Positions 35,015 through 52,139 of a stretch of DNA of 64,000 nucleotides are shown piece by piece; within the stretch, counting starts at the first letter, position 1; the number at the start of each line of letters is the position of its first letter. The notes beneath the pieces are model-generated. The model was given only the letters and a program-made list of their open reading frames with translations, ran no database searches and was not told where the DNA came from. The stretch is from positions 1 through 64,000 of the IMG/VR virus record IMGVR_UViG_3300028840_005860; one strand, 5' to 3'. Position numbers and translations under genes: made by a program.

Positions 35015-35443
35015 CTACGTGTTGGCGGAGAGCCAGCGCCGACGGTGGCCAGTACCCAACCCCCTCAACGGCTCCTCTACCTCGAACTCGAGACCTTCGA
35101 GGAAGCTCGCGTAGCTCTTGCCCGCCATCAGCACGAGCTTGATCCGCCTGCCCTCGTACCTCTCGAGCAGAGCTCGACGCACCCTGGCGCCCCACTCCTC
35201 GCGGACGGTCTTCGGAGCCCCGCTCAGGTTCTCGTCGTAGGGCTCGAGGACCTCGTCTGGGTGAACCAGCCCGTGCCGCGCCGAGAGGACCCACCACTCG
35301 TCGCAGCGGCGCTCGAGGTACCGAACCGACCTGTCGAACACGTAGGACGGGCTGTAGAGCTCCCTAGCCGGCGCCGGGCGGCACAGCTTCCTCTTGCTGC
35401 AGGAGACGAGCCCGACGACCAGAGGCCGAGACATACTAGCCAT
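35015..35443 (-). CDS. DUF6884-like protein
   Basis: LVSCSKRK...PARELYS...WWVLSARHGLVHPDEVLEPYD. Confidence 0.7.
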   Translation of the reverse strand: MASMSRPLVVGLVSCSKRKLCRPAPARELYSPSYVFDRSVRYLERRCDEWWVLSARHGLVHPDEVLEPYDENLSGAPKTVREEWGARVRRALLERYEGRRIKLVLMAGKSYASFLEGLEFEVEEPLRGLGTGHRRRWLSANT

Positions 35444-35729
35444 CGTACTCGGTGTACTCGCCCGGAAGTCAGGCTGCTAGAACCTCTTGCGCAGCCGACG
35501 CCCCTGCGCCACGTCGAACATCAAGTTCCTCGAGGGGCCCGACAGGGAACGCCAGAAGGAGAAGGAGGTCCGGTACTCGAGGGGCACCTGGTCGAGCTCG
35601 AGATGCGCCACGCTCTGCTGGAGGTTCCGCGCCCCTCTCGAGCGCAGGTACTCGAGCAGCCGGGCGAATTCCCGCTCCACCCCGTTGAGGGACTGCTCTC
35701 GAGACGACATCAGACGGCTCCTTCATCGG

Positions 35730-35801
35730 CACCCCCGGCTGGACTCGAACCAGCGACCTCGGATTCCGGAGACCCGTGCTCTTCCGCTGAGCTACGAGGG
35801 T
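35730..35801 (-). tRNA. tRNA-Arg(CCG)
   Basis: Full cloverleaf, loop CTCCGGA; no complete encoded CCA. Confidence 0.9.
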
Positions 35802-35802
35802 G

Positions 35803-35879
35803 TGGTGACCGGACCTGGACTTGAACCAGGGACCTCCTGCGTGTCACACAGGCGCTCTAACCTGCTGAGCTACCCGGCC
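35803..35879 (-). tRNA. tRNA-Val(GAC)
   Basis: Cloverleaf, loop GTGACAC, encoded CCA. Confidence 0.9.
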
Positions 35880-35882
35880 ATC

Positions 35883-35958
35883 TGGCGTTCCCGGTAGGGC
35901 TCGAACCTACGACCTCCGGTTTAGGAAACCGGTGCTCTTCCTTCTGAGCTACGAGAAC
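35883..35958 (-). tRNA. tRNA-Arg(CCT)
   Basis: Cloverleaf, loop TTCCTAA, encoded CCA. Confidence 0.92.
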
Positions 35959-35963
35959 CTGCG

Positions 35964-36518
35964 TCATTCCTCTTCAAGGTCCAGTTGCGGCGGGACCCAC
36001 GACAACTCGCCTCCCTGAAAGGCCGAGTGGCAGGCGTCTACCAGGGAGCCCCCGTAGCCGAGGACGGCGTCGGCATCGGCGACCATGTTCGGGTTCGGCT
36101 TGATGGTCGGCTTGGCCCGCATCACCGCCTTGACGGCCCCGACGGCGCCAGCCGGTCCGCGCTCGAGCTTGCTGGCGACCACCACCAGCGCCGCCGCCGA
36201 GCTCCTCGAGATGCCGTGACCGCAGTGGACGAGGAGGTGGTGACCAGCCCGGATGTCGGAGGCGAACTCCACGATCTTGTCGACGTCGGTCCTGGAGGGA
36301 GCGACGAGACCGGTACCCCGCACGAGCTGGGGCGGGTCGATGACGTCGTGAAAGAAGAGGCACAGCTGCTTCCTCTTGTGCTTCTTCAGGGTCCCGGGAG
36401 GATCCTGGTCGGGATCGTTGATGCTGATCACGTGCGTGAAGCTCCAGCTCACGCTCGAGCTGAGCAGCTCGGTCGCCTCCTTGCGACCTGCGATGGTGAT
36501 GTCGGGAAGTTGGGGCAT
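35964..36518 (-). CDS. Cys-dependent (CX5R) phosphatase
   Basis: THVISINDP, LFFHDV, VHCGHGISRSSAAA, KPNPNMV. Confidence 0.85.
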   Translation of the reverse strand: MPQLPDITIAGRKEATELLSSSVSWSFTHVISINDPDQDPPGTLKKHKRKQLCLFFHDVIDPPQLVRGTGLVAPSRTDVDKIVEFASDIRAGHHLLVHCGHGISRSSAAALVVVASKLERGPAGAVGAVKAVMRAKPTIKPNPNMVADADAVLGYGGSLVDACHSAFQGGELSWVPPQLDLEEE

Positions 36519-36536
36519 CGTCCTCCTTTCTACGCC

Positions 36537-36613
36537 TGGTAGGCCCGGTGGGACTCGAACCCACGACCTCGACCTTATAAGGGTCGAGCTCTGACCAGCT
36601 GAGCTACGGGCCC
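36537..36613 (-). tRNA. tRNA-Ile(TAT)
   Basis: Cloverleaf, stem CGACC/GGTCG, loop CTTATAA, A73, encoded CCA. Confidence 0.92.
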
Positions 36614-39937: not shown

Positions 39938-40390
39938 ATGAAGGTGATCTCAGGAGGCCAGACGGGCGTGGACCGCGGGGCCCTTGATGCGGCGATTGCG
40001 CAGGGCCTTCCCCATGGAGGCACCTGTCCGCGTGGGCGCCGCGCGGAGGACGGCCACATCCCCGAGACCTACGAGCTCAAGGAACACTCCTCGGAGAAGT
40101 ACCCGCCGCGCACGGTGAAGAACGTGTGCGACGCGGACGCGACGCTCGTCCTCGTTTCCCAACCCCGCGTTTCCGGCGGCACGAAGCTGACGGTGAAGAT
40201 CGCTCGCGACCGAGGCAAACCCTGGCTGCTCGTCCACATGCGTGACGAACATGTGGAGCGCGTGGCCCGCTGGATTTCCACGATCCAGCCCGGGGTGCTG
40301 AACGTGGCCGGTCCGCGCGAGTCGAAGCACCCCGGCATCCAGGTTCAGGCGAGGGACTTCCTGCGTAGGGTGTTCTCACGGATTTCGTGA
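39938..40390 (+). CDS. SLOG superfamily (molybdenum-carrier-like) protein
   Basis: KVISGGQTGVDRGALDAA, RT.KNV.DADATL, LNVAGPRES. Confidence 0.85.
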   Translation: MKVISGGQTGVDRGALDAAIAQGLPHGGTCPRGRRAEDGHIPETYELKEHSSEKYPPRTVKNVCDADATLVLVSQPRVSGGTKLTVKIARDRGKPWLLVHMRDEHVERVARWISTIQPGVLNVAGPRESKHPGIQVQARDFLRRVFSRIS

Positions 40391-40518: not shown

Positions 40519-41130
40519 ATGACCGACGACAACCTGGACGCGGCGATCAACGACAGCTTCCGCCAGCACAAGCGCGGGCTCATCCTCGAGAACCTGGCCG
40601 ACCGCCTGCACCTCACACTCGAGCAGGTCACCAAGCTCACTGCGCACCCCGACCACGGCGCGCTGGTGAAGGAGATCACGCTGCGCGAGCTCGTCGACGA
40701 GGTCAACAAGAAGGGCGGCAAGAAGGGCGGCAAGAAGGGTTCCCAGAAGGCCAAGAACTCCGCCAAGGGTGGCAAGAAGATCGCCAAGAGCTCCTCGAAG
40801 AAGGCCGCCAAGCCGCCCAAGAAGAAGGCCGCCAAGAAGAAGGCCGCCAAGAAGAAGGCCGCCAAGAAGAAGGCCGCCAAGAAGACCGCCAAGAAGGGTC
40901 CAAAGGCAGACAAGGGCAGACCGAAGCCGCGCCTCGACTACGAGACCGGGATGCGGGAGGTCCTGAGCGCCCTGCAGGCGACGGGGCAACCCACGGGCCG
41001 CCAGGCCATCGAGAACGCCACCGGCTACACCGGCGTCCAGGTCAGGACGTTCTGCAAGAGGCTGGCGACCGAGGGCAAGGTCAAGATCCTCGGCGAGGGT
41101 GGTCGGTCGACTCGCTATCAGGCCGTCTAG
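40519..41130 (+). CDS. histone H1-like Lys/Ala-rich protein with C-terminal winged helix
   Basis: (KKAAK)n repeats; VLSALQATGQPTGRQAI...GKVKILGEGGRSTRY. Confidence 0.75.
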   Translation: MTDDNLDAAINDSFRQHKRGLILENLADRLHLTLEQVTKLTAHPDHGALVKEITLRELVDEVNKKGGKKGGKKGSQKAKNSAKGGKKIAKSSSKKAAKPPKKKAAKKKAAKKKAAKKKAAKKTAKKGPKADKGRPKPRLDYETGMREVLSALQATGQPTGRQAIENATGYTGVQVRTFCKRLATEGKVKILGEGGRSTRYQAV

Positions 41131-41133
41131 TCG

Positions 41134-41505
41134 ATGGCGGACCACGACTCGGTCGTCCTCGACCCCCCGCAGCAGGTTTACCTGTTCGACGAGGAGGGCC
41201 AACCCGTCCTCGAGCCGCTCCGACGTCTCGAGGACGTGGCGCCGGGGCTCGTCGTCTGCTTCAGGAATCCCTGGCGTCCGGACGAGTTCGCCCGGGCGCT
41301 GGTACGAGGGCAGCCCGACGCCGTGGTCCTCGAGGTGGGCAACTCGCTAGGTTCTCTCGAGCTAGACGACGAGCTCGGCTGGGTGTGCCGCGGGCTCGTC
41401 AAGAAGCACAGCGTGTTCTCGGGCCTGGCCGAGGAGATGGTGGAGAAGGCGACCGAGGCGGCCTACACCGACGAGCTCATGAAGAAGATGGCCGGCAAGA
41501 AGTGA
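41134..41505 (+). CDS. hypothetical protein
   Basis: 123 aa ORF. Confidence 0.65.
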   Translation: MADHDSVVLDPPQQVYLFDEEGQPVLEPLRRLEDVAPGLVVCFRNPWRPDEFARALVRGQPDAVVLEVGNSLGSLELDDELGWVCRGLVKKHSVFSGLAEEMVEKATEAAYTDELMKKMAGKK

Positions 41506-41623
41506 AACCCTCCTAGCCCCTCACCCACTTCCGCTGTCGGGTGGCAGCGCGAGGAGCCGCCACGTCCGGTCAGCCCACGGAATGTCGACCCTGCTCTAGG
41601 GAAGGGGTGGCCGGGCACCACCC

Positions 41624-42196
41624 CTACCGAGGTCCTCTCGAGAGGTCGAGGAACTCCGCTCTGGCCTCGGGCTTCGTCCTCAGCACCCCCCGGAGGTCGC
41701 TGGTGATCATCTCGTTCCTCGAGCGGATGCCTCGGTGCTCGCAACAGGAGTGGCGACCCCGCACCACCACCCCGACTCCCAGCGGCTCGAGCACCTTCTC
41801 GAGCGCGCCGGCGATCTGGTGTGTCATGCGCTCCTGAACCTGAAGTCGCCGGGCAAAGCAGTGGACGAGCCGGGGCAGCTTGGAGAGCCCGACGAGTTTC
41901 CCGCGGGGGATGTAGGCGACGTCGCAGGTGCCCGAGAACGGCATCAGGTGATGCTGGCACAGGGAGCTGTAGGGGATGTCGCGCACGACGACCATCTCGT
42001 CGTACTTCTCCTCGAAGACCGTGCCCAGGATCTCCTCGGGGTCCTGTCTGTAGCCCTCGGTCATCTCGCGCAGGGCTCGGGCCACCCGAGCTGGCGTCCT
42101 CTCCAGTCCAGGCCTGGTCGGGTCCTCGCCCACCCAGTGCAGCAGGGTCCGGACGGCCTCTTCGACGTGCTCGCGCAGCAGCTCCTCGTCTCTCAT
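41624..42196 (-). CDS. folE: GTP cyclohydrolase I
   Basis: GEDPTRPGLERTPARV, SLCQHHLMPF, GLSKLPR, RLQVQER, HSCCEHRG. Confidence 0.95.
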   Translation of the reverse strand: MRDEELLREHVEEAVRTLLHWVGEDPTRPGLERTPARVARALREMTEGYRQDPEEILGTVFEEKYDEMVVVRDIPYSSLCQHHLMPFSGTCDVAYIPRGKLVGLSKLPRLVHCFARRLQVQERMTHQIAGALEKVLEPLGVGVVVRGRHSCCEHRGIRSRNEMITSDLRGVLRTKPEARAEFLDLSRGPR

Positions 42197-42840
42197 CAGG
42201 GAACCTCCAGCCACTTGTGGATCTGCAGGGACAGCCGCCAGTCGGGATGCTTGAGGCAGAACGCCACCGCCCAGTCCAGCACCTCGCCGAAGGGCGGTCC
42301 CGAACTCGGTGCCTCGGGTTGGACGAATCGATGTCGGCACTCGACCTCCTCGTACTCGAGCGGGTCGTAGGCCGGGAAGACGACCTTGAGCTCGTCGGCC
42401 TTCCTGAGCCTCAGCTCCGAGAACGGGCGCTTGGGGCTGAGCGAGACCCAGTCGAACCCCCCGACGAACGGGAGCTCGAGCGTTCCGTTCGTCTCGAGCG
42501 CCAGCGTGGCGTCCGGGAGGCCGTCGTCCACGGCCTCGAGCAGCTCGGCGTCGAGTTGGAGGAGAGGCTCCCCGCCGGTGAAGACCACGTGCTGGATGCC
42601 GTCGGCGAGTTCGACTACCCGAGCTGCGACCTGCTCGGCCTCGAGGCGTTCGCCCTCGAGGAAGTCCGTGTCGCACCAGGCCGGACACCGAGCTCGAGAC
42701 TTCGCGACGTCCCTAGCCCGATGCCCTTCCCGTCCCGACCAGAGGTTGCAGCCCGCCAGCCTGACGAAGACCGCCGGCGTGCCAGTCCAGTACCCTTCGC
42801 CCTGGAGGGACCTGAAGACCTCTTTGATGCGGTAACTCAT
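42196..42840 (-). CDS. queE: 7-carboxy-7-deazaguanine synthase (radical SAM)
   Basis: KEVFRSLQGEG...PAVFVRLAGCNLW...WCDTDF, FTGGEP, ETNG, SLQIHKWL. Confidence 0.93.
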   Translation of the reverse strand: MSYRIKEVFRSLQGEGYWTGTPAVFVRLAGCNLWSGREGHRARDVAKSRARCPAWCDTDFLEGERLEAEQVAARVVELADGIQHVVFTGGEPLLQLDAELLEAVDDGLPDATLALETNGTLELPFVGGFDWVSLSPKRPFSELRLRKADELKVVFPAYDPLEYEEVECRHRFVQPEAPSSGPPFGEVLDWAVAFCLKHPDWRLSLQIHKWLEVP

Positions 42841-43415
42841 CGACCACCTGCCCCCTTCTGCATCTGTCGATGAACGGCCTCGAGGTCGTAGGGGCTGGGC
42901 GTGGTCCCCGAGATCGACAGTCGTCTCTTCTTGGGCCGGTGCCTCACGCTCGAGAACGTGGCCCTTGAGGTCGGGGTCTCCCAGACGACGACCTCCACCA
43001 TCTCGAACTCCTCGAGCTGCGGGCTGGAGTTGGCCAGCCAGTACAGGTGCCTAGCCAGGCACTCTGCCGTCGGGGGTTCCTCGAGCGCGAACCATCGGCG
43101 CCCCCCGTCGGCCACCTGCATCTCCGACATCTTCGCCATCAGCTCGTCCTGCTCCCAGTAGCAGACGTTGTGGTCCCAGTTGTCGTTGACCCAACCCCCG
43201 ACGATCCTCTTCAGCAGCCCGAAGTCGACCACGAAGCCTTCCTCGGTCAGCTTCTTCGCCCTGCAGGTCACCTCGGCCCGGTACCGGTGACCGTGGAGGT
43301 GGCGGCACTTGCCGTCGTGAAGCGGGATGCGATGCGCCATGTCCCACTCGATGGTGGCCGTCACCTCGTAGTCCCCGTCGGACCGGACGGCCGGAGCTTC
43401 TGCTGTGCTGGTCAT
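42837..43415 (-). CDS. queD: 6-carboxytetrahydropterin synthase domain, possible internal start
   Basis: AHRIPLHDGKCRHLHGHRY, GFVVDFG, WDH, PTAE, VWETPTS; GAGGAGG SD before ATG 43415. Confidence 0.9.
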   Translation of the reverse strand: MTSTAEAPAVRSDGDYEVTATIEWDMAHRIPLHDGKCRHLHGHRYRAEVTCRAKKLTEEGFVVDFGLLKRIVGGWVNDNWDHNVCYWEQDELMAKMSEMQVADGGRRWFALEEPPTAECLARHLYWLANSSPQLEEFEMVEVVVWETPTSRATFSSVRHRPKKRRLSISGTTPSPYDLEAVHRQMQKGAGGR

Positions 43416-44222
43416 GACCTCTTCCTCCTCCTGGACCGGGAAGTGCTCGAAGATCCCCTCGTAGGCGACGTACGTCTCGGTCTCGGCCACCATCTCAAGG
43501 ACCTTCCGTCGGTACTGCTCGGCGTAGGTCTGGCTGTGCCGGGCTCGAGGATCCTCCTCCCGCACGCGACCCTCCCAGCTCCATGCCATCGAGTCCGAGC
43601 TGGCCAGGTACGGCAGCGCCCGTCGCAGGCCGCTGATCTTGACGCCGAAGCCGTGAAGTCGAAGGCCGAGCGCGCTGAGCTCCCCCAGCATCTCGATCAC
43701 CTCGTCGTCGGACTGGCGCCGGGCGATGGAACCGACTCCCACTAGGGGCTGCTCGAGCAGGTCGATGCCGGCCTCGTCGTACATCTCGATGTGGCGGAAG
43801 TAGTCATCGAGCCCCCAGCCCTGGAGGGTTGGAAGCCAGGCCACCCCGGGCTCGAGCTGAACGAGCTCGAGCCAGCTGCGGACGGTGAGCTCCTGGTGCT
43901 CGAGCACGCTCTTGCCGGTCGCCTCGAGGACGTCCGGGCTGCACAGCCAGTCCTGCGTGGCCGCCCACTCCATCGTCCCGGTACCCTCCGCGATCTGCCT
44001 CACCCGCCTGGCGTACTCCTCCGCCGAGACCTTCCAGCGGCCGTTCCGAGCCAGGTGGGAGTACGCGCCCGAGTCCAGGGCGAAGGGCGCTCGGCCGGCG
44101 GGGAAGGGTCTTTTGCGGGGCGCCAGCACGTGGTAGGCGACGAAGAGGTGCTCCGAGCTCCCCCCGTTCCAGACCCAGTTGGTCCGGTCCGTACCCAGGT
44201 AGAACGTGAAGTCGAAGCTCAG
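42837..44222 (-). CDS. dpdA: DpdA-like (DUF7221-type) TGT-fold transglycosylase fused in frame to QueD
   Basis: FYLGT, FALDSG, AATQDWLC, PTLQGW, VGVGSIARRQ, LHGFGVK, SSDSMAWS; CTG start inferred from overlap with the queC stop. Confidence 0.75.
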   Translation of the reverse strand: MSFDFTFYLGTDRTNWVWNGGSSEHLFVAYHVLAPRKRPFPAGRAPFALDSGAYSHLARNGRWKVSAEEYARRVRQIAEGTGTMEWAATQDWLCSPDVLEATGKSVLEHQELTVRSWLELVQLEPGVAWLPTLQGWGLDDYFRHIEMYDEAGIDLLEQPLVGVGSIARRQSDDEVIEMLGELSALGLRLHGFGVKISGLRRALPYLASSDSMAWSWEGRVREEDPRARHSQTYAEQYRRKVLEMVAETETYVAYEGIFEHFPVQEEEEVMTSTAEAPAVRSDGDYEVTATIEWDMAHRIPLHDGKCRHLHGHRYRAEVTCRAKKLTEEGFVVDFGLLKRIVGGWVNDNWDHNVCYWEQDELMAKMSEMQVADGGRRWFALEEPPTAECLARHLYWLANSSPQLEEFEMVEVVVWETPTSRATFSSVRHRPKKRRLSISGTTPSPYDLEAVHRQMQKGAGGR

Positions 44223-45058
44223 GGCTCGTCCTTCCCTCGGGGGTCGTCGGCTCCGTTGCGCAGGGCCTCCTCGACCTCCTCCTTGGTGATGCGCCGAGCC
44301 TTCTTGAGGTCCTCGGGAGACAGCGGCCTGGCGGGGTCGGGCACCCCAAACTCGACCGGCACGTACGCCTGAGCCGGATCCTTCAGCCCGGCCTCCTCGA
44401 ACCCGCGAGCCCGAAGCTTGCAGGCCGGGCACTCGCCGCAGCCTGGCCTCTCGCCCCGGTAGCAGGTCACGCTTCTTTCCAGCGCCTTCCAGCAGTCGTC
44501 TCCGAGGAGTAGGGCGAAGAGAACTGTCTCCTTCTTGGTCTTCTTCAGGAGGGGAGCGTGGATGGTCCAGGGGAGCGTCGAGCTCGGCATCGCGGCCTCC
44601 AGCGCCATCACCATCTTCTCGATGAACACCTGGCGACAGTCCGGGTACCCGCTGAAGTCGGCTTCCGAGAACCCCACCACGAGGTCGCTAGAGCCCTTCT
44701 TCACGGCGTACGCGGCCGCCGCCCCGAGGAACAAGAGGTTGCGGCCCGGAACGAAGGAGGTCGGAAGCCCGCCAGCCACTTCGTCGTCGTCCAGCCCGCC
44801 CGAACTCTGCAGCTTCCTCGAGCTCGTCGCCAGCAGAGCCGAGTCCCCGAGCTGTGCCAGCACGCTCAGCTCGAGAATATCGTGGGGAACGCCGGCCTGC
44901 CTCGCGATGTCGCCAGCTGCCAGGAGCTCGTCCGCGTGGCGCTGGCCGTAGTCGAACGACAGCGCGAAGACGTCGTCGAACCCGTTCCTCGCCCAGAAGA
45001 GGCAGGTCGTGGAGTCCTGACCTCCACTGAAGAGAACCACGGCCGATGACCTGATCAT
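44219..45058 (-). CDS. queC: 7-cyano-7-deazaguanine synthase
   Basis: VVLFSGGQDSTT, FDYGQRH, FVPGRN, GYPDCR, CY...CGECPAC. Confidence 0.95.
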   Translation of the reverse strand: MIRSSAVVLFSGGQDSTTCLFWARNGFDDVFALSFDYGQRHADELLAAGDIARQAGVPHDILELSVLAQLGDSALLATSSRKLQSSGGLDDDEVAGGLPTSFVPGRNLLFLGAAAAYAVKKGSSDLVVGFSEADFSGYPDCRQVFIEKMVMALEAAMPSSTLPWTIHAPLLKKTKKETVLFALLLGDDCWKALERSVTCYRGERPGCGECPACKLRARGFEEAGLKDPAQAYVPVEFGVPDPARPLSPEDLKKARRITKEEVEEALRNGADDPRGKDEP

Positions 45059-45067
45059 GTCCCCACA

Positions 45068-45529
45068 CTACTCCCCTTTCGCGACGGGGTCGTCGGTGGG
45101 GATCTTCTCCACGTCGATGACGAAGATCCAGTTGGGGGCGATCTGGTGCCGCTCGGCCCAGCGGTTCATCGTCGAGAAGAGGTCACCGAGCAGCTCCTCC
45201 CACTCCTTCGCGCCGACGGGTTCCCTGAAGGGGGTGCCCGACACGCAGGCCCTGGGCGCCCCCTGATGGATCAGGAAATCCTCCATCCGCTCCTCGAAGA
45301 GCTGCATCGTCTCGTCGTTGAGGGCCGAGGCGACGAGCTCCTGCCGCATCACCGCCGGGTCGAAGGTACGTCCCAACAGGAACGCCCCCTTCGTCTCCTC
45401 TCGCGCCCCCTTGATGGTCAGATGACGCGACAGGGTCGGAGGACTCCAGTCCTTGCCATCCGAGGACCACGTCCAGTGGTCTCGCTCGTGCTCCTGGTCG
45501 AGGGGAATGAGTTCTTCTGAGGCAAACAT
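45068..45529 (-). CDS. hypothetical protein
   Basis: 153 aa ORF immediately upstream of queC, same strand. Confidence 0.6.
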   Translation of the reverse strand: MFASEELIPLDQEHERDHWTWSSDGKDWSPPTLSRHLTIKGAREETKGAFLLGRTFDPAVMRQELVASALNDETMQLFEERMEDFLIHQGAPRACVSGTPFREPVGAKEWEELLGDLFSTMNRWAERHQIAPNWIFVIDVEKIPTDDPVAKGE

Positions 45530-45580
45530 CTCTTCTTCTACTCCCCCCGGAGTTTCACGAAACCGGGAGTACAACGAGGG

Positions 45581-47195
45581 ATGGCGGAGTCCGAGTTCGA
45601 CGGCCACAGGCTGCTCGAGGCAGCCCGAGACCAGTTCGTCCGAGACATGGAGGCGTCCTTCGGCGAGCGCTGGGCGGAGTTCTCCGAGGAGCTGTGCGGC
45701 ATGCTGTTCGAGCTGTGGTCTCGAGCCAAGGTCGGGGAGCCGCTGCCCTGGTTGCAGGAGGAGCACGAGCAGTTGCTGGTCGACCGCCTCGTCCGGCTCT
45801 TCAAGGACCACCCCGGTCTCCGAGCGGCAGCCGTTCACGACACGCTGACCGCGGGTTCCGGGCTCCTGGTCTCCTGGTCTTCTCACGGCCAACACCTCGA
45901 CCTCGACCAGGTCAACGGTGGCGGCATTCCCAAGTACGCCACCGGCGAGCCCGTCGAGATACAGCAGAACCTGCGCGAGCGCCTCGAGCAGCTGGGTCTC
46001 GCACCTCACGGCTCGCTTCCCGGAGGGTACGACGGGTACCTGCCGGTCCTCCTCGATCAGGCGACCGGGGAGATCGGGGGCTACAGCTACGGCACGTTCT
46101 TCGTCCTCGAGACCGTCCACACATCCCTCGAGACCTCCGACGGCATCTACTGGGCCTTCCCGGACCCCAAGCCCGGGTACTCGTCCTACGCCCACCAGCC
46201 GCACGTCCACCTCCTCGTCGACGGCGAGCCCGAGTGGAACGAGCACTGCACCTGGAACATGCAGACGAACGTCGACGGTCGCGACGTCATCAGCTCGGTC
46301 GGACCCTCGACGGCCGTCTCCACGAGCACGGTCACGGCGGTGTACACTGCGATCAAGAGACGACCATGACCGACCAGTTCGACCGAGACCTCGAGGCCGT
46401 CTTCGACGAGCGCGCCGTCAGCTTCTCCGGCGATCTCCGCGACCGCCTCAGGCAGCTCTGGCGCCAGGGCGTCCTCGAGGGACGGGCTCTCGAGCGAAAG
46501 CAGCTGGCCCTCGACATCAGCAACAGCTGGTACGACCCCAAGCTGGGAAGCCTTGTCGTGCCGATGAAGGAGCCGCTGGTGAGGATCGAGAACGGCTTCT
46601 TCACGTGGACGCAGGCTGGCCGGACGAAGGGGGCCCGCGACGAGAACCGCTTCGCCTCCTGGACGGGCCCCTGGGAGGCCCTGACCGTCGGTCTCGAGGA
46701 GGAGCTCGCCAAACCCAAGCAGGCCCAACCCCTCGAGTTGGTGATCAACGACGACCTTGATGCCCGGCTCCGCGACGATCTCAAGCGAGGAATAGGGGAC
46801 TTCATCCAGGCCCTCTATAATCCCCGCACCTTGAGGGAGTTCAACAACGAATGGGTCCAGAAGCTAGAGCCGAACTCGCCGAGATCGACGGTGCCCTCCA
46901 AGAAGGGACCGTGAGGACCCTTCAGGTTCGTTTCCCGGGTCAGCGGCGCCACACCAAGCAGCCGCTCACGCGCTGGGGCGACTACACCTGGCTGTTCCCC
47001 TTCGGCATCCAGCCCGACCTGAAGGCCCCCGTGGAGGTCTACCGGAACGGCATCGCCCAGTGGATGGGCCAGGAGTGCGAGATCGTCGTGGTGGGCAGCC
47101 CCCGCTGGGTCACCGTCGCGGTGTTCGGCGCTCCGTCGAAGGAGGGCGACGTGGTCCAGGCCAGCTACGAGACGGATCCCGACCAGAGCGGGTAG
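45581..47195 (+). other. hypothetical genes 45581-46369, 46366-46914, 46911-47195
   Basis: Overlap-coupled ORFs. Confidence 0.7.
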
Positions 47196-47722
47196 CCAGC
47201 CCGCTCGAACTCGTGACCGAACCGCTGGTGGATGGCCTCGAGCGACCGGCGGTCCACGTACTCGTGCCAGGGACGCCGCCCCGTCGTCGGGTTCAGGTGC
47301 GGGAGCGGCACGCCCTCCCAGCCGAGTTTCGCCATCACCCTTCGGAAGTCGGCCTCGAGGGACTCGTAGCGCATCACCTCGTCGGCCACCTCGAGGTGGG
47401 CGAAGAGCTCCCTCTCCCCGGGTTGCACGTGCAGCTCGTCCCAGCACCGGACGTACTCGAGCAGCGACATCCTGGGTTCGACCGGTCCCTTGCGGCTCCA
47501 GGGCCCCTTTGTCCTCAGCCAGTCGATGACCACGATCTCGTAGGGGTTCCTCACCGTCGTGAACGCGAGCTCGCCTCCGGCGACCGGCAGGTCCTCGAGC
47601 AGCAGGTGGGGGGGCCGAACGTCCTCGGCGCCGCAGCGGTCTACGAGCGCCCTGACGACCGAGTGTGAGCCCGTCCTCGGCGTCGCCAGGAAGACGAACC
47701 GGCCTCGAAGGAGGGCCGCCAT
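47165..47722 (-). CDS. sulfotransferase family protein
   Basis: FVFLATPRTGSHSV (5'-PSB-like loop), FTTVRNPY, VMRYESLEADF. Confidence 0.75.
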   Translation of the reverse strand: MAALLRGRFVFLATPRTGSHSVVRALVDRCGAEDVRPPHLLLEDLPVAGGELAFTTVRNPYEIVVIDWLRTKGPWSRKGPVEPRMSLLEYVRCWDELHVQPGERELFAHLEVADEVMRYESLEADFRRVMAKLGWEGVPLPHLNPTTGRRPWHEYVDRRSLEAIHQRFGHEFERAGYPLWSGSVS

Positions 47723-48208
47723 CGTCACTCCGAGCGGCGTGCCTCGTATCCCATCAGCTTGTGAGGAACGAAGAGCGCCCCGGCACCGTGGCCGTGACTA
47801 GCCACGCTGGTGGGGGTGCCGACCCAGATCAGGGTGCCGGCCACGTGCTCTCGCATCTGGTCCTCGTCCCGGTAGACCCAGAGCCCCCAGGCCTTGTGAT
47901 GGCCGTGCTCGTCGGGTTCGTCCATGGGAAACCACTTGCTCATGCCGTGTCTCCTTGTCGCTTCATCTCAGCGCGATCTGTTTCCTGGGACAGCGAGCGG
48001 CGTGCCCCGTGGCCGGGTCGATCCCCCGCTCCCTGCAGGTCGCCCACCACTCGGGGGCCAGTCCCCCGAGCGCCGGCTTCCAGCTGGCGATGCGGTGCTC
48101 GCAGAAGGGGCACTTCCCGTTCATCACGAGGCACCTCTGTTCCTCCGTGAGCTCGCGCGCGTCGACTCCTTGGAGCTCGAACATCTCCCTCCTTATACCC
48201 GTCTCCGC

Positions 48209-48237
48209 TTGACAGGGACCGAGCCGGGCAGTACAAC
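48209..48237 (+). promoter_or_regulatory. sigma70-type promoter TTGACA-N17-TACAAC upstream of the tRNA-Gln pair
   Basis: Consensus -35 and 17-nt spacer. Confidence 0.6.
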
Positions 48238-48370
48238 AGGTTCATGGCTACCAGGCTGCAACAGGCCCAGACGTAGCCGGCTCGAGATCCTCGGGCCGGC
48301 GCCACATCCGTGCGCGAGCCCGAGGCCCATCAAGTGCCCCGACGTGCCCGCGCCGGGGTTTTCACGTTCC

Positions 48371-48446
48371 TGGGGCGTAGGTCAGTTGGCAGACCGCCGG
48401 GCTCTGAACCCGGAAGTCGAAGGTTCGAACCCTTCCGCCCCAGCCA
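48371..48446 (+). tRNA. tRNA-Gln(CTG)
   Basis: U1-A72, loop CTCTGAA, G73, CCA. Confidence 0.92.
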
Positions 48447-48447
48447 C

Positions 48448-48518
48448 TCGGGAGTCGTCTAGCGGTCGGACGCCTGACTTTGGATCAGGAAACCGGGGTT
48501 CGAGTCCCTGCTCCCGAG
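48448..48518 (+). tRNA. tRNA-Gln(TTG)
   Basis: U1-A72, loop CTTTGGA, G73. Confidence 0.92.
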
Positions 48519-48779
48519 CTGCCGTCAGCGTCGAAGGCTGTTCATCAGTTTGAGGAGCCTCTCGCCCCGGAGCGCGGCTTCCTTGCATTCTTCCAGGTCG
48601 CACAGGTCCTCGCAGAACGTCCCGTACTGGTTCGTCACGGTGATCGGCTTGCCCGAGCGTGTGCACAGGATCTCCACGCTGTCCGGGGCTGTCCAGTGAT
48701 GTCGCGAGTCACACATCATGCGTACCAGTCTCTGTCTCTGGGCCGTCTCGCCCCCGTCACGGTACCACCTCTCCATCTA

Positions 48780-50947: not shown

Positions 50948-51628
50948 CTAGTCGTCCCCATCCTCCAGGCTTTCCACGACGACCGACCGGTCGCGCGCTT
51001 GAGCCAGCGCATCAAGCAGCTGGGGTGTTGGATCGAGTAGCTCCTCGGGTTGCGGGGCGTCCAGTCCCCAGTGGGCCGTCTCCCTCGTGCCGGTCACGTA
51101 CAGCTCCACGTGCAGCATGCTCGTCGGGCGCCCCTTGTCGTTACGCAGGACCCTCTTGACGTGGCCCAGGAACTCGCCTCGAGCGACGTCCGCCTCAAAC
51201 TCGACGACCGGGGTCATCTCGCCGTAGCAGACCACCCCGGACTCGCCCTCCACCAGCACGGCCTGAGTGTCGTGCCACCAGGGAGAGTCGGCCTTCGGCC
51301 CCGTGAAGTTCTCGACCAGCACCACGCGGCCAGCCTCCACCGCCACGACCTCGGTGCCGGGCTCGGCGTACAGGTCGACGCCCGTGTGCGTGTCGAACCG
51401 CCTGCGGACCCCGAACCGTCCCGGCTCGTCGGGCCACAGGCACGGGGCGTCCCGCAGAGGCCAGAGCCAGCGCGTCGCCTCGTTCAGCTCGTGGGCCCGA
51501 ACGACGGCCTCGTCTCGGCCGGCAGCTGGCGTCGACTCCTTCTTCAGCCGGTCGTGGACGAACCATCGCGTGGGTTCGTCGCCGTTCCCGGGCACGCTGA
51601 CGGGCAGGTAACGCCTCTCCCCGCGCAT
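50948..51628 (-). CDS. M23 family metallopeptidase
   Basis: HTGVDL (HxxxD), VVAVEAGRV, MLHVELY. Confidence 0.8.
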   Translation of the reverse strand: MRGERRYLPVSVPGNGDEPTRWFVHDRLKKESTPAAGRDEAVVRAHELNEATRWLWPLRDAPCLWPDEPGRFGVRRRFDTHTGVDLYAEPGTEVVAVEAGRVVLVENFTGPKADSPWWHDTQAVLVEGESGVVCYGEMTPVVEFEADVARGEFLGHVKRVLRNDKGRPTSMLHVELYVTGTRETAHWGLDAPQPEELLDPTPQLLDALAQARDRSVVVESLEDGDD

Positions 51629-51632
51629 CGCC

Positions 51633-52139
51633 TCAGTCCTCGTCCTCCACGACGACTCCCCCGTCGGCGGTGATCTTGATGACCTTGCTGACCTTCCTCT
51701 TGCCCACCTGGACCGTGACCGCGACCGCGGCCGGCAGCGGCATGCTCGAGCTCTGGCTCTGAACCTGTTTGTAGCCGCGCTTCGTGCCCACGTCACCCTC
51801 CACGCGGGTCTCGAGGGTGATGTGGCCGACGAGCCTCCCCCTCCTTCTCACGGTGAACAGGAGCTTCTCGATCCCGTGCATCCGGGCGTACCACCGTCCG
51901 TCGCGTGCGCCGTAGTAGGTCGCGCGTCGGCTGTTGGCTCGGGCTCCCGCCACGTCGTGCTCGTCCGCGAGGCGTACGTCGTCCCCGTCCTCGAACTTGG
52001 TCCCGCGGTACAGGCTGCTCTCCCTCATGGCCGCGAGGAGCTCCCGGGCCAGCCGGGGGGCGTCCGGAACCTCGGGTACCGCTATGAGCCCTCCGACCTC
52101 GTTGCAGCTTCCTTCTTCCCAAGTCTGAACTGCCTTCAT
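51633..52139 (-). CDS. hypothetical protein
   Basis: 168 aa ORF. Confidence 0.6.
   Translation of the reverse strand: MKAVQTWEEGSCNEVGGLIAVPEVPDAPRLARELLAAMRESSLYRGTKFEDGDDVRLADEHDVAGARANSRRATYYGARDGRWYARMHGIEKLLFTVRRRGRLVGHITLETRVEGDVGTKRGYKQVQSQSSSMPLPAAVAVTVQVGKRKVSKVIKITADGGVVVEDED

What the first reader, a model, noticed from the sequence alone, without database searches (positions are those of the whole stretch)
41624..45058. Complete 7-deazaguanine DNA-modification operon
Seen: queC, dpdA-queD, queE and folE form one translationally coupled minus-strand unit. Established: FolE, QueD, QueE and QueC make preQ0 from GTP, and phage DpdA transglycosylases insert it into DNA to block restriction. 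Inference: with no QueF, ArcS or GAT-QueC in the window, dPreQ0 is the expected base. Such a system in a putatively myxobacterial large phage would widen the known host range.
Basis: partly seen in the sequence, partly recalled or inferred. Interest (0 to 1): 0.7.

Follow-up and report, generated by a model that had tools for sequence, protein, structure and literature searches.

The report
Phage 7-deazaguanine DNA-modification gene cassette
An uncultured 230-kb sediment phage carries a complete, tightly packed gene set for making the modified base preQ0 and swapping it into its own DNA; this is a known anti-restriction strategy, here with an unusual fused enzyme and a non-standard start codon.

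Summary
On the minus strand, 45058..41624 encodes QueC, a single DpdA-QueD open reading frame, QueE and FolE, joined by overlapping stop and start codons.

The window is the first 64 kb of a 230,069-bp viral contig estimated about 90% complete. That contig has terminase, portal and ribonucleotide reductase genes. It has no QueF, ArcS, Gat-QueC amidotransferase domain, second QueC or QueD, formyltransferase, tRNA-type TGT or DpdB. dPreQ0 is therefore the most likely DNA base, as in phages Rosebush and CAjan, but it was not measured.

New details:
- DpdA and QueD are fused in frame. The closest uncultured relatives keep the same gene order with two separate genes.
- The DpdA start codon is CTG where relatives have ATG or GTG. 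It overlaps the QueC stop codon.
- This DpdA clade has lost the Cys zinc motif and resembles the "singleton" DpdAs of mycobacteriophages, not Rosebush DpdA.
- QueE has a C-x20-C-x3-C cluster motif.

The myxobacterial host is not supported. The nearest terminase belongs to an uncultured 485-kb phage that lacks DpdA.

Verdict: a new member of a known kind, of modest interest.

The parts
45068..45529 (-). Unknown 153-aa gene directly upstream of queC. It lies on the same strand with a 9-nt gap and may be the first gene of the transcription unit.
   Evidence: Gene call in the identical locus L004. No Pfam, PHROG or PADLOC match. It is not conserved upstream of queC in relatives L091 and L093, so it is probably not part of the functional cassette.
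44219..45058 (-). QueC (7-cyano-7-deazaguanine synthase), 279 aa. It has a poorly conserved C-terminal extension of about 55 aa.
   Evidence: PF06508 E=2e-65 and TIGR00364 above its cut-off. E=2.8e-48 to B. subtilis QueC 3BL5, with the SGGQDS loop and the C...CxxCxxC zinc ligands aligned. The extension codes in the QueC frame, GC3 0.88. It aligns poorly with relatives.
44220..44222 (-). CTG codon at the position of the DpdA start codon. It overlaps the QueC TGA stop (CTGA) and is preceded by a purine-rich Shine-Dalgarno-like GGGAAGGA.
   Evidence: Relatives have ATG (L095, L093/L094) or, a few codons upstream, GTG (L091) before the conserved (D)FTFYLGT/FDFTFF block. The junction is identical in three other assemblies. 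Coding periodicity switches frame exactly here.
43458..44222 (-). DpdA domain (7-deazaguanine DNA transglycosylase, TGT-fold TIM barrel), residues 1-255 of the 461-aa protein.
   Evidence: PF23859 E=1.6e-52 and phrog_1279 E=1e-57. AlphaFold pLDDT is 92-99 over residues 1-250, with residues 6-11 forming a strand. Foldseek top hits are tRNA-guanine transglycosylases, probability 1.00. D50, D91, H190 and D210 are invariant or nearly invariant in the alignments. The Cys zinc motif is absent.
43374..43457 (-). Acidic linker joining DpdA and QueD in frame. It contains a strong internal Shine-Dalgarno sequence (GGAGGAGGAAGAGG) and ATG 43415-43413, which could also start a free-standing QueD.
   Evidence: There is no stop codon. 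pLDDT is below 50 for residues 256-281. Relatives end DpdA with a stop here and start queD separately. The 80%-identical P0002 is fused in the same way.
42837..43373 (-). QueD domain (6-carboxytetrahydropterin synthase) plus a basic C-terminal tail. The stop TGA is at 42839-42837.
   Evidence: PF01242 E=1.8e-28 and phrog_2389 E=6e-33. E=3e-14 to CPH4 synthase 7V0F. The C-x3-HGH motif (CRHLHGH) is visible in the translation.
42196..42840 (-). QueE (7-carboxy-7-deazaguanine synthase, radical SAM), 214 aa. Its ATG overlaps the DpdA-QueD stop (ATGA).
   Evidence: TIGR04508 E=5.5e-51, below that model's cut-off. E=9e-39 over the full length to Burkholderia QueE 4NJG. The cluster motif is C31-x20-C52-x3-C56 and is conserved in three relatives.
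41624..42196 (-). FolE (GTP cyclohydrolase I), 190 aa. The A of its ATG is the last base of the QueE stop (TGATG).
   Evidence: PF01227 E=7e-68; TIGR00063 198 bits against a cut-off of 181.6; phrog_2197. The gene call in L004 gives 190 aa.
41600..41628 (-). G+C-rich 9-bp hairpin straight after the FolE stop. It is a possible terminator but has no U-tract.
   Evidence: Fold of 41575-41640: the stem is present, but the z-score is only -0.6. The consensus terminator scan finds nothing in 41000-48500. This is weak evidence.

Best explanation
This is a phage anti-restriction cassette that replaces part of the guanines in the phage's own DNA with a 7-deazaguanine, most likely 2'-deoxy-preQ0.

**Proposed pathway.** FolE converts GTP to dihydroneopterin triphosphate. 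The QueD domain makes CPH4. QueE makes 7-carboxy-7-deazaguanine. QueC converts that, through the amide, to preQ0. The DpdA domain then exchanges guanine in double-stranded phage DNA for free preQ0 after replication. It would use the two-aspartate base-exchange mechanism of the TGT superfamily, without a DpdB partner.

**Expression.** The genes are read as one unit by ribosomes passing from gene to gene. DpdA is probably started by re-initiation at a CUG codon that overlaps the QueC stop. QueD is made both as the C-terminal half of a DpdA-QueD fusion and possibly on its own from an internal start.

**What is shown and what is inferred.** Shown: gene identities, gene order, junctions, the fold, conservation, and the absence of downstream tailoring genes. 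Inferred: the DNA substrate, the base installed, the fraction of G replaced, the use of CUG, and the anti-restriction role.
For: - All five activities are identified by curated HMMs and by matches to solved homologues.
- The DpdA domain matches PF23859, not PF01702. It folds confidently as a TGT-type barrel and keeps D50, D91, H190 and D210.
- The 230-kb contig (about 90% complete) has no QueF, ArcS, GATase_7 amidotransferase domain (as in Gat-QueC), second QueC, second PTPS, formyltransferase, YaaA/DpdC-family or DndB/DpdB-family match.
- Phages with exactly this gene complement (Rosebush, CAjan) carry dPreQ0 on 28-32% of G, and deleting dpdA abolishes it (PMC6884629).
- The cassette order queC-dpdA-queD-queE-folE recurs in independent uncultured contigs.
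- Between the window and its 80% relative, the DpdA core is 89% identical against 76% for the QueD core. DpdA is therefore under purifying selection despite lacking an ATG.
- Codons 2-31 keep GC3 0.97, invariant residues and dN/dS of 0.4-0.7.
Against: - No chemistry was measured.
- No member of this DpdA subgroup has shown activity. Its nearest cultured relatives are singleton DpdAs of mycobacteriophages at about 41% identity. Orion, described as a singleton-DpdA mycobacteriophage, carried no modification (PMC6884629). I assume from recalled cluster membership that Orion's DpdA is of this kind; I did not compare it.
- Rosebush DpdA is only 23% identical over 111 residues, so the analogy rests on the pathway, not on the transglycosylase.
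- The zinc-binding cysteines conserved in TGT and in most DpdAs are gone.
- CUG is a poor initiator in model bacteria, so DpdA levels may be low.
- The contig is about 90% complete, so a tailoring gene could lie in the missing part.
Confidence: 0.7

Rival explanations
1. The system is the same, but the base that ends up in DNA is not dPreQ0. It could be dADG, made either by hydration of inserted preQ0 by a DpdC-like enzyme or by release of the amide intermediate from QueC. It could also be dPreQ1 if the host's QueF reduces the phage-made preQ0.
For: - DpdC belongs to the DUF328/YaaA family (PMC5699537), and DUF6884 is distantly related to YaaA (PMC11701544).
- The phage encodes a DUF6884 protein with the CxxxK and LSAxxG motifs at 35015-35443 on the same strand.
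- In the 80% relative, a DUF6884 gene lies directly downstream of folE.
- Some DpdAs are promiscuous, and host enzymes can contribute (PMC10516641).
Against: - The DUF6884 protein matches neither the PADLOC DpdC model nor PF03883.
- Its homologues are common in phages listed without any DpdA match, such as the 17-kb Microbacterium phages, Mx4 and Caulobacter phages.
- It is absent beside the cassette in L091, L093 and L095.
- QueC is canonical, with a strong match to B. subtilis QueC and all motifs present.
- dADG was only a trace in Rosebush (PMC6884629).
Confidence: 0.15
2. DpdA is barely or not made, because its start codon is lost and its stop codon has fused it to QueD. The cassette would then mainly supply preQ0 (or GTP-derived pterins) to the cell, for example to feed host tRNA queuosine, and would not modify DNA.
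For: - Both ends of dpdA are altered relative to all close relatives: ATG to CTG, and loss of the stop.
- QueD keeps its own Shine-Dalgarno sequence and ATG, so the pathway does not depend on DpdA translation.
Against: - The DpdA core is more conserved than the QueD core between the window and P0002 (89% against 76%), with no stops or frameshifts.
- All residues invariant in the family are retained, including four within the first 31 codons.
- GC3 is 0.91-0.97.
- A Shine-Dalgarno-like motif sits 6 nt upstream of the CTG, and the QueC stop overlaps it.
Confidence: 0.08
3. The TGT-fold protein is a tRNA-modifying enzyme, and the operon reprogrammes translation through queuosine or archaeosine-like tRNA modification.
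For: The fold is shared with tRNA-guanine transglycosylases, which are the top Foldseek hits. The phage carries its own tRNAs.
Against: - There is no match to PF01702 even at E<=0.1, and a strong match to the DpdA family.
- The domain is only about 255 residues. It has no further C-terminal RNA-binding domain (the model shows only the linker and QueD after residue 255) and lacks the zinc motif.
- No QueA, QueG, QueH or QueF genes were looked for or seen beyond QueF.
- Per PMC10516641, DpdA is a signature of DNA modification in all phages tested.
Confidence: 0.04

Closest known systems
[quoted passage not shown] 2019, PMC6884629)
   Same: - The gene complement is the same: DpdA, FolE, QueD, QueE and QueC, with no amidotransferase or QueF.
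- The genes are contiguous and co-oriented. Rosebush genes 2-6 overlap one another in the same way.
- The expected product is dPreQ0, giving partial protection from restriction enzymes.
   Different: - The gene order differs: queC-dpdA-queD-queE-folE here, dpdA-queC-queD-queE-folE in Rosebush.
- Rosebush DpdA is 385 aa and only 23% identical over 111 residues. QueC is 32% and QueE 31% identical.
- Rosebush has a ParB-like gene next to dpdA. This phage has no DndB-family match.
- Here DpdA is fused to QueD and starts at CTG.
Uncultured cassette relatives (contigs behind L091, L093/L094, L095, and P0002)
   Same: - The five-gene order is the same.
- DpdA is 53-62% identical and lacks the zinc motif in the same way.
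- QueE has the same C-x20-C-x3-C motif, and QueC has a C-terminal extension.
- P0002 (80% identity) shares the DpdA-QueD fusion.
   Different: L091, L093 and L095 have separate dpdA and queD genes and an ATG or GTG start for dpdA. The fusion and the CTG are derived traits of the window's lineage.
Singleton DpdAs of mycobacteriophages (for example Beezoo, Findley, and the roughly 68-kb phages with the gene near 16 kb)
   Same: They are the closest DpdAs among cultured phages, 39-42% identical over more than 80% of the domain. They share the conserved DSG, QDW, LHGFG and SxDSMAWS motifs.
   Different: - They stand alone with no que genes nearby.
- They keep the C-x-H...C-x2-C zinc motif.
- A singleton-DpdA mycobacteriophage, Orion, showed no DNA modification (PMC6884629). 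I assign Orion to this subgroup from recalled cluster membership, not from a comparison made here.
Bacterial Dpd restriction-modification system (Salmonella Montevideo DpdA/B/C; PMC10164549)
   Same: The superfamily and the proposed chemistry are the same: exchange of guanine in DNA for preQ0 through a covalent aspartate intermediate.
   Different: - There is no DpdB ATPase partner, no DpdC-family match and no match to PADLOC Dpd models.
- The phage protein lacks the large zinc-containing insertion.
- In bacteria only about 0.1% of G is modified, and the system serves self/non-self discrimination.

Membership tests
Phage 7-deazaguanine DNA-modification cluster, preQ0 type (Hutinet group 2) | A DpdA-family transglycosylase is encoded | tested here: met
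   PF23859, 178.7 bits against a cut-off of 27. It is the only such match in the 230-kb contig.
Phage 7-deazaguanine DNA-modification cluster, preQ0 type (Hutinet group 2) | [quoted passage not shown] | tested here: met
   QueE and QueD score below the strict NCBIfam equivalog cut-offs but match solved QueE and QueD structures over their full length or core.
Phage 7-deazaguanine DNA-modification cluster, preQ0 type (Hutinet group 2) | No QueF, ArcS, Gat-QueC or other tailoring enzyme (DpdL as a second PTPS, DpdN formyltransferase) | tested here: met
   Whole-contig HMM searches are negative. The only QueF signal is the FolE T-fold cross-hit. The contig is about 90% complete. DpdM was not searched, but it is irrelevant without preQ1.
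Phage 7-deazaguanine DNA-modification cluster, preQ0 type (Hutinet group 2) | dPreQ0 is present in virion DNA | not testable with these tools
   No isolate is available, and no long-read run was listed.
DpdA (PF23859) within the TGT superfamily | TIM-barrel TGT fold | tested here: met
   AlphaFold pLDDT is 92-99 for residues 1-250. Foldseek hits bacterial, archaeal and murine TGTs at probability 1.00.
DpdA (PF23859) within the TGT superfamily | Catalytic and substrate-binding Asp/Asp/His/Asp set (Asp95, Asp130, His181, Asp256 in S. Montevideo DpdA) | tested here: inconclusive
   D50 (ALDSG), D91 (QDW), H190 (LHGFG) and D210 (SSDSMAWS) are invariant or at least 90% conserved across 22-40 homologues. 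Their equivalence to the Salmonella residues is inferred from motif context. No residue-level superposition was made, and sequence searches against the PDB found no DpdA.
DpdA (PF23859) within the TGT superfamily | Structural zinc site (Cys/His cluster after the last barrel strand) | tested here: not met
   The window, P0003 and P0009 have no cysteines where Beezoo DpdA, P0084 and P0029 have C-x-H-x2..C-x2-C. This is lost in the whole cassette clade.
DpdA (PF23859) within the TGT superfamily | Acts on DNA, not tRNA | not testable with these tools
   Only indirect evidence: family membership and no PF01702 match.
tRNA-guanine transglycosylase (PF01702) | Match to the TGT family model | tested here: not met
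   No match in the whole contig at E<=0.1, while all 14 control genomes match.
Bacterial Dpd restriction-modification system | A DpdB (DndB/ParB-like ATPase) partner and a DpdC (DUF328/YaaA family) are present | tested here: not met
   PF14072 and PF03883 are absent from the contig. The PADLOC scan of the operon proteins gives only QueC.
QueE, Cx14CxxC subclass (TIGR04508) | C-x14-C-x2-C iron-sulfur motif and a score above the equivalog cut-off | tested here: not met
   173 bits against a cut-off of 240. The motif here is C-x20-C-x3-C, conserved in four clade members. The rest of the protein aligns end to end with 4NJG.

The most novel reading that the evidence does not exclude
The phage does not stop at dPreQ0. 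Its DUF6884 protein (35015-35443) is a distant relative of the YaaA/DUF328 family to which bacterial DpdC belongs, and in the nearest relative the gene sits directly after folE. It would act as a phage-type DpdC analogue that flips out inserted preQ0 and hydrates it to dADG. That would assign a first function to a widespread family of unknown function.
Probability: 0.08. Interest if true: 0.6.

Novelty: new member of a known kind. Interest (0 to 1): 0.3.

Why it matters
Cassettes that put 7-deazaguanine into DNA are an established phage counter-defence, so this one mainly adds an instance from an uncultured, high-G+C, 230-kb sediment phage.

Three points are of some value to specialists.
- It links the large DpdA subgroup that has no demonstrated activity, typified by mycobacteriophage singletons, to a full preQ0 pathway. 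This supports the idea that the subgroup really handles 7-deazaguanines.
- It shows that a DpdA can do without the zinc cysteines conserved elsewhere in the superfamily.
- It gives a natural case of an essential-looking enzyme whose only plausible start is a CUG that overlaps the upstream stop. That is a clean test bed for termination-reinitiation at non-AUG codons.

It is also a warning for annotation. The automatic call P0001 removes the first 31 residues, which include the first barrel strands.

Tried and rejected
1. **GTG 44432 as the DpdA start.** Rejected. The 70 upstream codons have GC3 0.49 in that frame and 0.88 in the QueC frame.
2. **GTG 44129, the start used in the database protein P0001.** Rejected. 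It deletes residues 1-31, including the confidently modelled strands 6-11 and 26-29 and four invariant residues.
3. **Programmed -1 frameshift fusing QueC to DpdA.** I read the last 60 nt of queC by eye and saw no X-XXY-YYZ slippery site. It is not excluded experimentally.
4. **DpdA as a pseudogene.** Rejected on conservation.
5. **preQ1 riboswitch or other RNA element.** Rfam finds only tRNAs in the window.
6. **Sigma-70 promoters and intrinsic terminators in 41000-48500.** None found. The post-folE hairpin folds no better than shuffled sequence.
7. **Related loci in IMG/VR viral contigs.** None returned.
8. **Sequence search of the PDB with DpdA, alone and as a profile.** No relevant hit.
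9. **Contigs of more distant relatives in wetland and marine-sediment runs, laid on the locus to see their start codon.** Only 150-230-nt fragments were recovered, none informative at 44220-44222.
10. **DNA of the P0002 contig.** It could not be fetched.
11. **Long-read runs for modification signals.** None was listed.
12. **Specific linkage of DUF6884 to DpdA.** Not supported. Homologues occur in many phages that gave no DpdA match.
13. **Host assignment.** Terminase, DpdA and DUF6884 homologues point in different directions. The nearest huge-phage relative, LR745208.1, has no DpdA.
14. **Other long DpdA proteins.** None carries QueD. Some carry DndB or RepSA domains.

Full report
**Setting.** The window is bases 1-64000 of a single 230,069-bp viral contig. 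The contig is linear, and CheckV estimates it to be about 90% complete. It has 66% G+C. The contig encodes a large terminase (199558-201459), a portal protein, a class I ribonucleotide reductase, helicases and a sigma-like factor. The window holds six or seven tRNA genes. It is therefore a large tailed phage. The same locus occurs at 99.93-99.99% identity in three other assemblies: an ENA assembly, a Logan run and a JGI metagenome. Runs that hold it are labelled sediment, seawater, marine sediment and wetland metagenomes.

**The observation.** Four minus-strand ORFs fill 45058..41624.
- QueC (279 aa): PF06508 E=2e-65, TIGR00364 above its cut-off, and E=2.8e-48 to B. subtilis QueC. The PP-loop and the four zinc cysteines are aligned.
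- The next ORF carries a DpdA domain (PF23859 E=1.6e-52, phrog_1279) and a QueD/PTPS domain (PF01242 E=1.8e-28, phrog_2389). The QueD part matches CPH4 synthase 7V0F and has the C-x3-HGH motif. No stop separates the two domains.
- QueE (214 aa) aligns end to end with Burkholderia QueE 4NJG at E=9e-39.
- FolE (190 aa) passes the TIGR00063 equivalog cut-off.

The junctions read from the sequence are CTGA (QueC stop and DpdA first codon), an in-frame fusion (DpdA-QueD), ATGA (QueD/QueE) and TGATG (QueE/FolE). A 153-aa gene of unknown function lies 9 nt upstream on the same strand. It is not conserved next to the cassette in relatives. A G+C-rich hairpin follows folE but is not a convincing terminator. 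No riboswitch was found.

**Where DpdA starts.**
- The mechanical ORF begins at GTG 44432. The 210 nt between 44432 and 44222 show the codon-position G+C pattern of the QueC frame (0.79/0.45/0.88) and not that of the DpdA frame (0.87/0.77/0.49). From 44222 onward the DpdA frame has GC3 0.91.
- The database protein P0001 starts at GTG 44129. That start removes 31 residues. These residues contain family-invariant positions L9, G10, W16 and F27. They also form two confidently modelled strands of the barrel.
- In the closest relatives the gene begins M-K/T-Y-D-F/Y-T/D-F-Y-L-G-T with ATG, or a few codons further upstream with GTG. The window has CTG-AGC-TTC-GAC... at exactly the ATG position.
- A purine-rich GGGAAGGA lies 6 nt upstream, and the QueC stop overlaps the CTG.
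- The junction is identical in all three other assemblies.
- In the 80%-identical relative P0002, the called QueC end and the called DpdA start are 90 nt apart, the same spacing as here. This suggests the same arrangement, but its DNA could not be fetched.
- I saw no slippery heptamer for a -1 frameshift in the last 60 nt of queC.
- The DpdA core is 89% identical between the window and P0002, against 76% for the QueD core and 65% for the linker. The domain is therefore under purifying selection and must be made.

The best reading is initiation or re-initiation at CUG, coupled to QueC termination. This is an inference.

**The fusion.** Relatives L091, L093/L094 and L095 carry queC-dpdA-queD-queE-folE with separate dpdA and queD genes, and the dpdA stop lies at or just before the queD ATG. 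In the window and in P0002 that stop is gone. The two domains are joined by an acidic linker of low confidence, pLDDT below 50 for residues 256-281. The queD ATG (43415-43413) and a strong Shine-Dalgarno sequence survive inside the linker, so free QueD may also be made. An exhaustive HMMER search of 1.84 billion representatives listed, among the best 150, only the P0002 cluster as matching across both domains. Ten other long DpdAs carry no PTPS domain; two carry DndB or RepSA. QueD and DpdA catalyse non-adjacent steps, so I see no channelling logic. The fusion looks like a tolerated stop-codon loss at an overlapping junction.

**What kind of DpdA.**
- The domain folds as a TGT-type TIM barrel. 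Its best solved matches are bacterial, archaeal and mammalian tRNA-guanine transglycosylases.
- It does not match the TGT Pfam model. No further domain follows it other than the linker and QueD.
- D50, D91, H190 and D210 sit in the DSG, QDW, LHGFG and SxDSMAWS motifs and are invariant or nearly so. I infer that they correspond to the acid/base Asp, the base-recognising Asp and His, and the nucleophile Asp defined in Salmonella DpdA (PMC10164549). I did not superpose the structures.
- The retained His argues against the DpdA2 subfamily, which lacks it (PMC6884629).
- The cassette clade (window, P0003-P0013) has lost the Cys/His zinc motif that Beezoo DpdA and more distant homologues keep.
- Among cultured phages the nearest DpdAs are the singleton genes of about 400 mycobacteriophages, at 39-42% identity. 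Rosebush DpdA, from a phage with proven dPreQ0, is only 23% identical over 111 residues.
- Eighty related genes in bacterial genomes are all singletons without que genes within 6 kb. They come from Thermoanaerobaculia at 47-49% identity, many actinomycetes, Sorangium and Myxococcales at 44-48%, and Planctomycetota.

**Which base.** Whole-contig searches were negative for:
- QueF, apart from the expected T-fold cross-hit on FolE;
- the ArcS core DUF5591;
- a class-II amidotransferase domain;
- a second QueC or a second PTPS;
- a formyltransferase;
- a YaaA/DpdC-family protein;
- DndB/DpdB.

QueC is a canonical preQ0 synthase by sequence. This is the gene pattern of Hutinet's second group. Its tested members, Rosebush and CAjan, carry dPreQ0 on 28-32% of G, and deletion of dpdA removes the modification and the restriction resistance (PMC6884629). 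dPreQ0 is therefore the default prediction.

One loose end remains. The phage has a DUF6884 gene 6 kb downstream on the same strand, and P0002's contig has one directly after folE. DUF6884 is distantly related to YaaA (PMC11701544), the family of DpdC (PMC5699537). However, DUF6884 homologues are frequent in phages that gave no DpdA match, so I give the dADG variant a low probability.

**Other details.** QueE of the whole clade has C-x20-C-x3-C where Burkholderia QueE has C-x14-C-x2-C.

**Host and the cassette's mobility.**
- The terminase's best match is an uncultured 485-kb phage, LR745208.1, at 54% identity. The next is an Acidobacteriota phage at 26%.
- DpdA and DUF6884 homologues point to several high-G+C phyla.
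- LR745208.1 has no DpdA of this family, so the cassette is an accessory module and not a lineage trait.

**Verdict.** This is a real, complete and almost certainly functional 7-deazaguanine DNA-modification cassette. It is a new member of a well-known kind, with some unusual implementation details: a CUG start, a DpdA-QueD fusion, a zinc-motif-less DpdA and a variant QueE motif. Its chemistry is unmeasured and its host is unknown.

Noticed in passing
window 35015-35443 (-): A DUF6884 (YaaA-like) protein of 142 aa with the CxxxK and LSAxxG motifs. It matches the PADLOC defence candidate PDC-M57A (E=5e-30). In the 80% relative's contig, a DUF6884 gene sits directly after folE. Homologues occur in Microbacterium, Myxococcus Mx4, Caulobacter and halophilic phages.
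   Followed up: partly
window 42196-42840 (-), residues 31-56 of QueE: The radical-SAM cluster motif is C-x20-C-x3-C, not the C-x14-C-x2-C of Burkholderia QueE. It is conserved in three relatives that are 49-58% identical.
   Followed up: partly
window 39938-40390 (+): A circularly permuted YpsA SLOG-family protein (PF12694, E=4e-52) lies about 1.2 kb beyond the end of the operon, on the opposite strand. Its function in phages is unknown.
   Followed up: no
window 40519-41130 (+): A lysine/alanine-rich, histone-H1-like repeat protein (KKAAKK runs) with a weak C-terminal winged-helix-like match. It is probably a DNA-binding protein.
   Followed up: no
window 47165-47722 (-): A 185-aa protein with a weak match to a phage sulfotransferase family (phrog_3347, E=6e-4) and a PRTGS-type loop near its N-terminus.
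   Followed up: no
window 35728-36613 (-) and 48371-48519 (+): tRNA genes: Arg-CCG, Val-GAC, Arg-CCT and Ile-TAT in one cluster, and a tandem Gln-CTG/Gln-TTG pair. A Leu-AAG call at 29103-29174 is made by ARAGORN only and is not confirmed by Rfam.
   Followed up: partly
L005 7285-9293, compared with the window below about 40847: A strain from another run is 99.93% identical through the operon and then diverges. It carries a dCTP deaminase/dUTPase gene where the window has other genes. This is mosaic variation just downstream of the cassette.
   Followed up: no
window 50948-51796 (-): A 282-aa protein with weak endolysin and metallo-endopeptidase PHROG matches (E=1e-6).
   Followed up: no
P0173 and P0185 (database proteins, not in the window): Other natural DpdA fusions exist: DpdA-DndB (a single-chain DpdA-DpdB analogue) and DpdA joined to a pSAM2-type replication initiator domain.
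   Followed up: no
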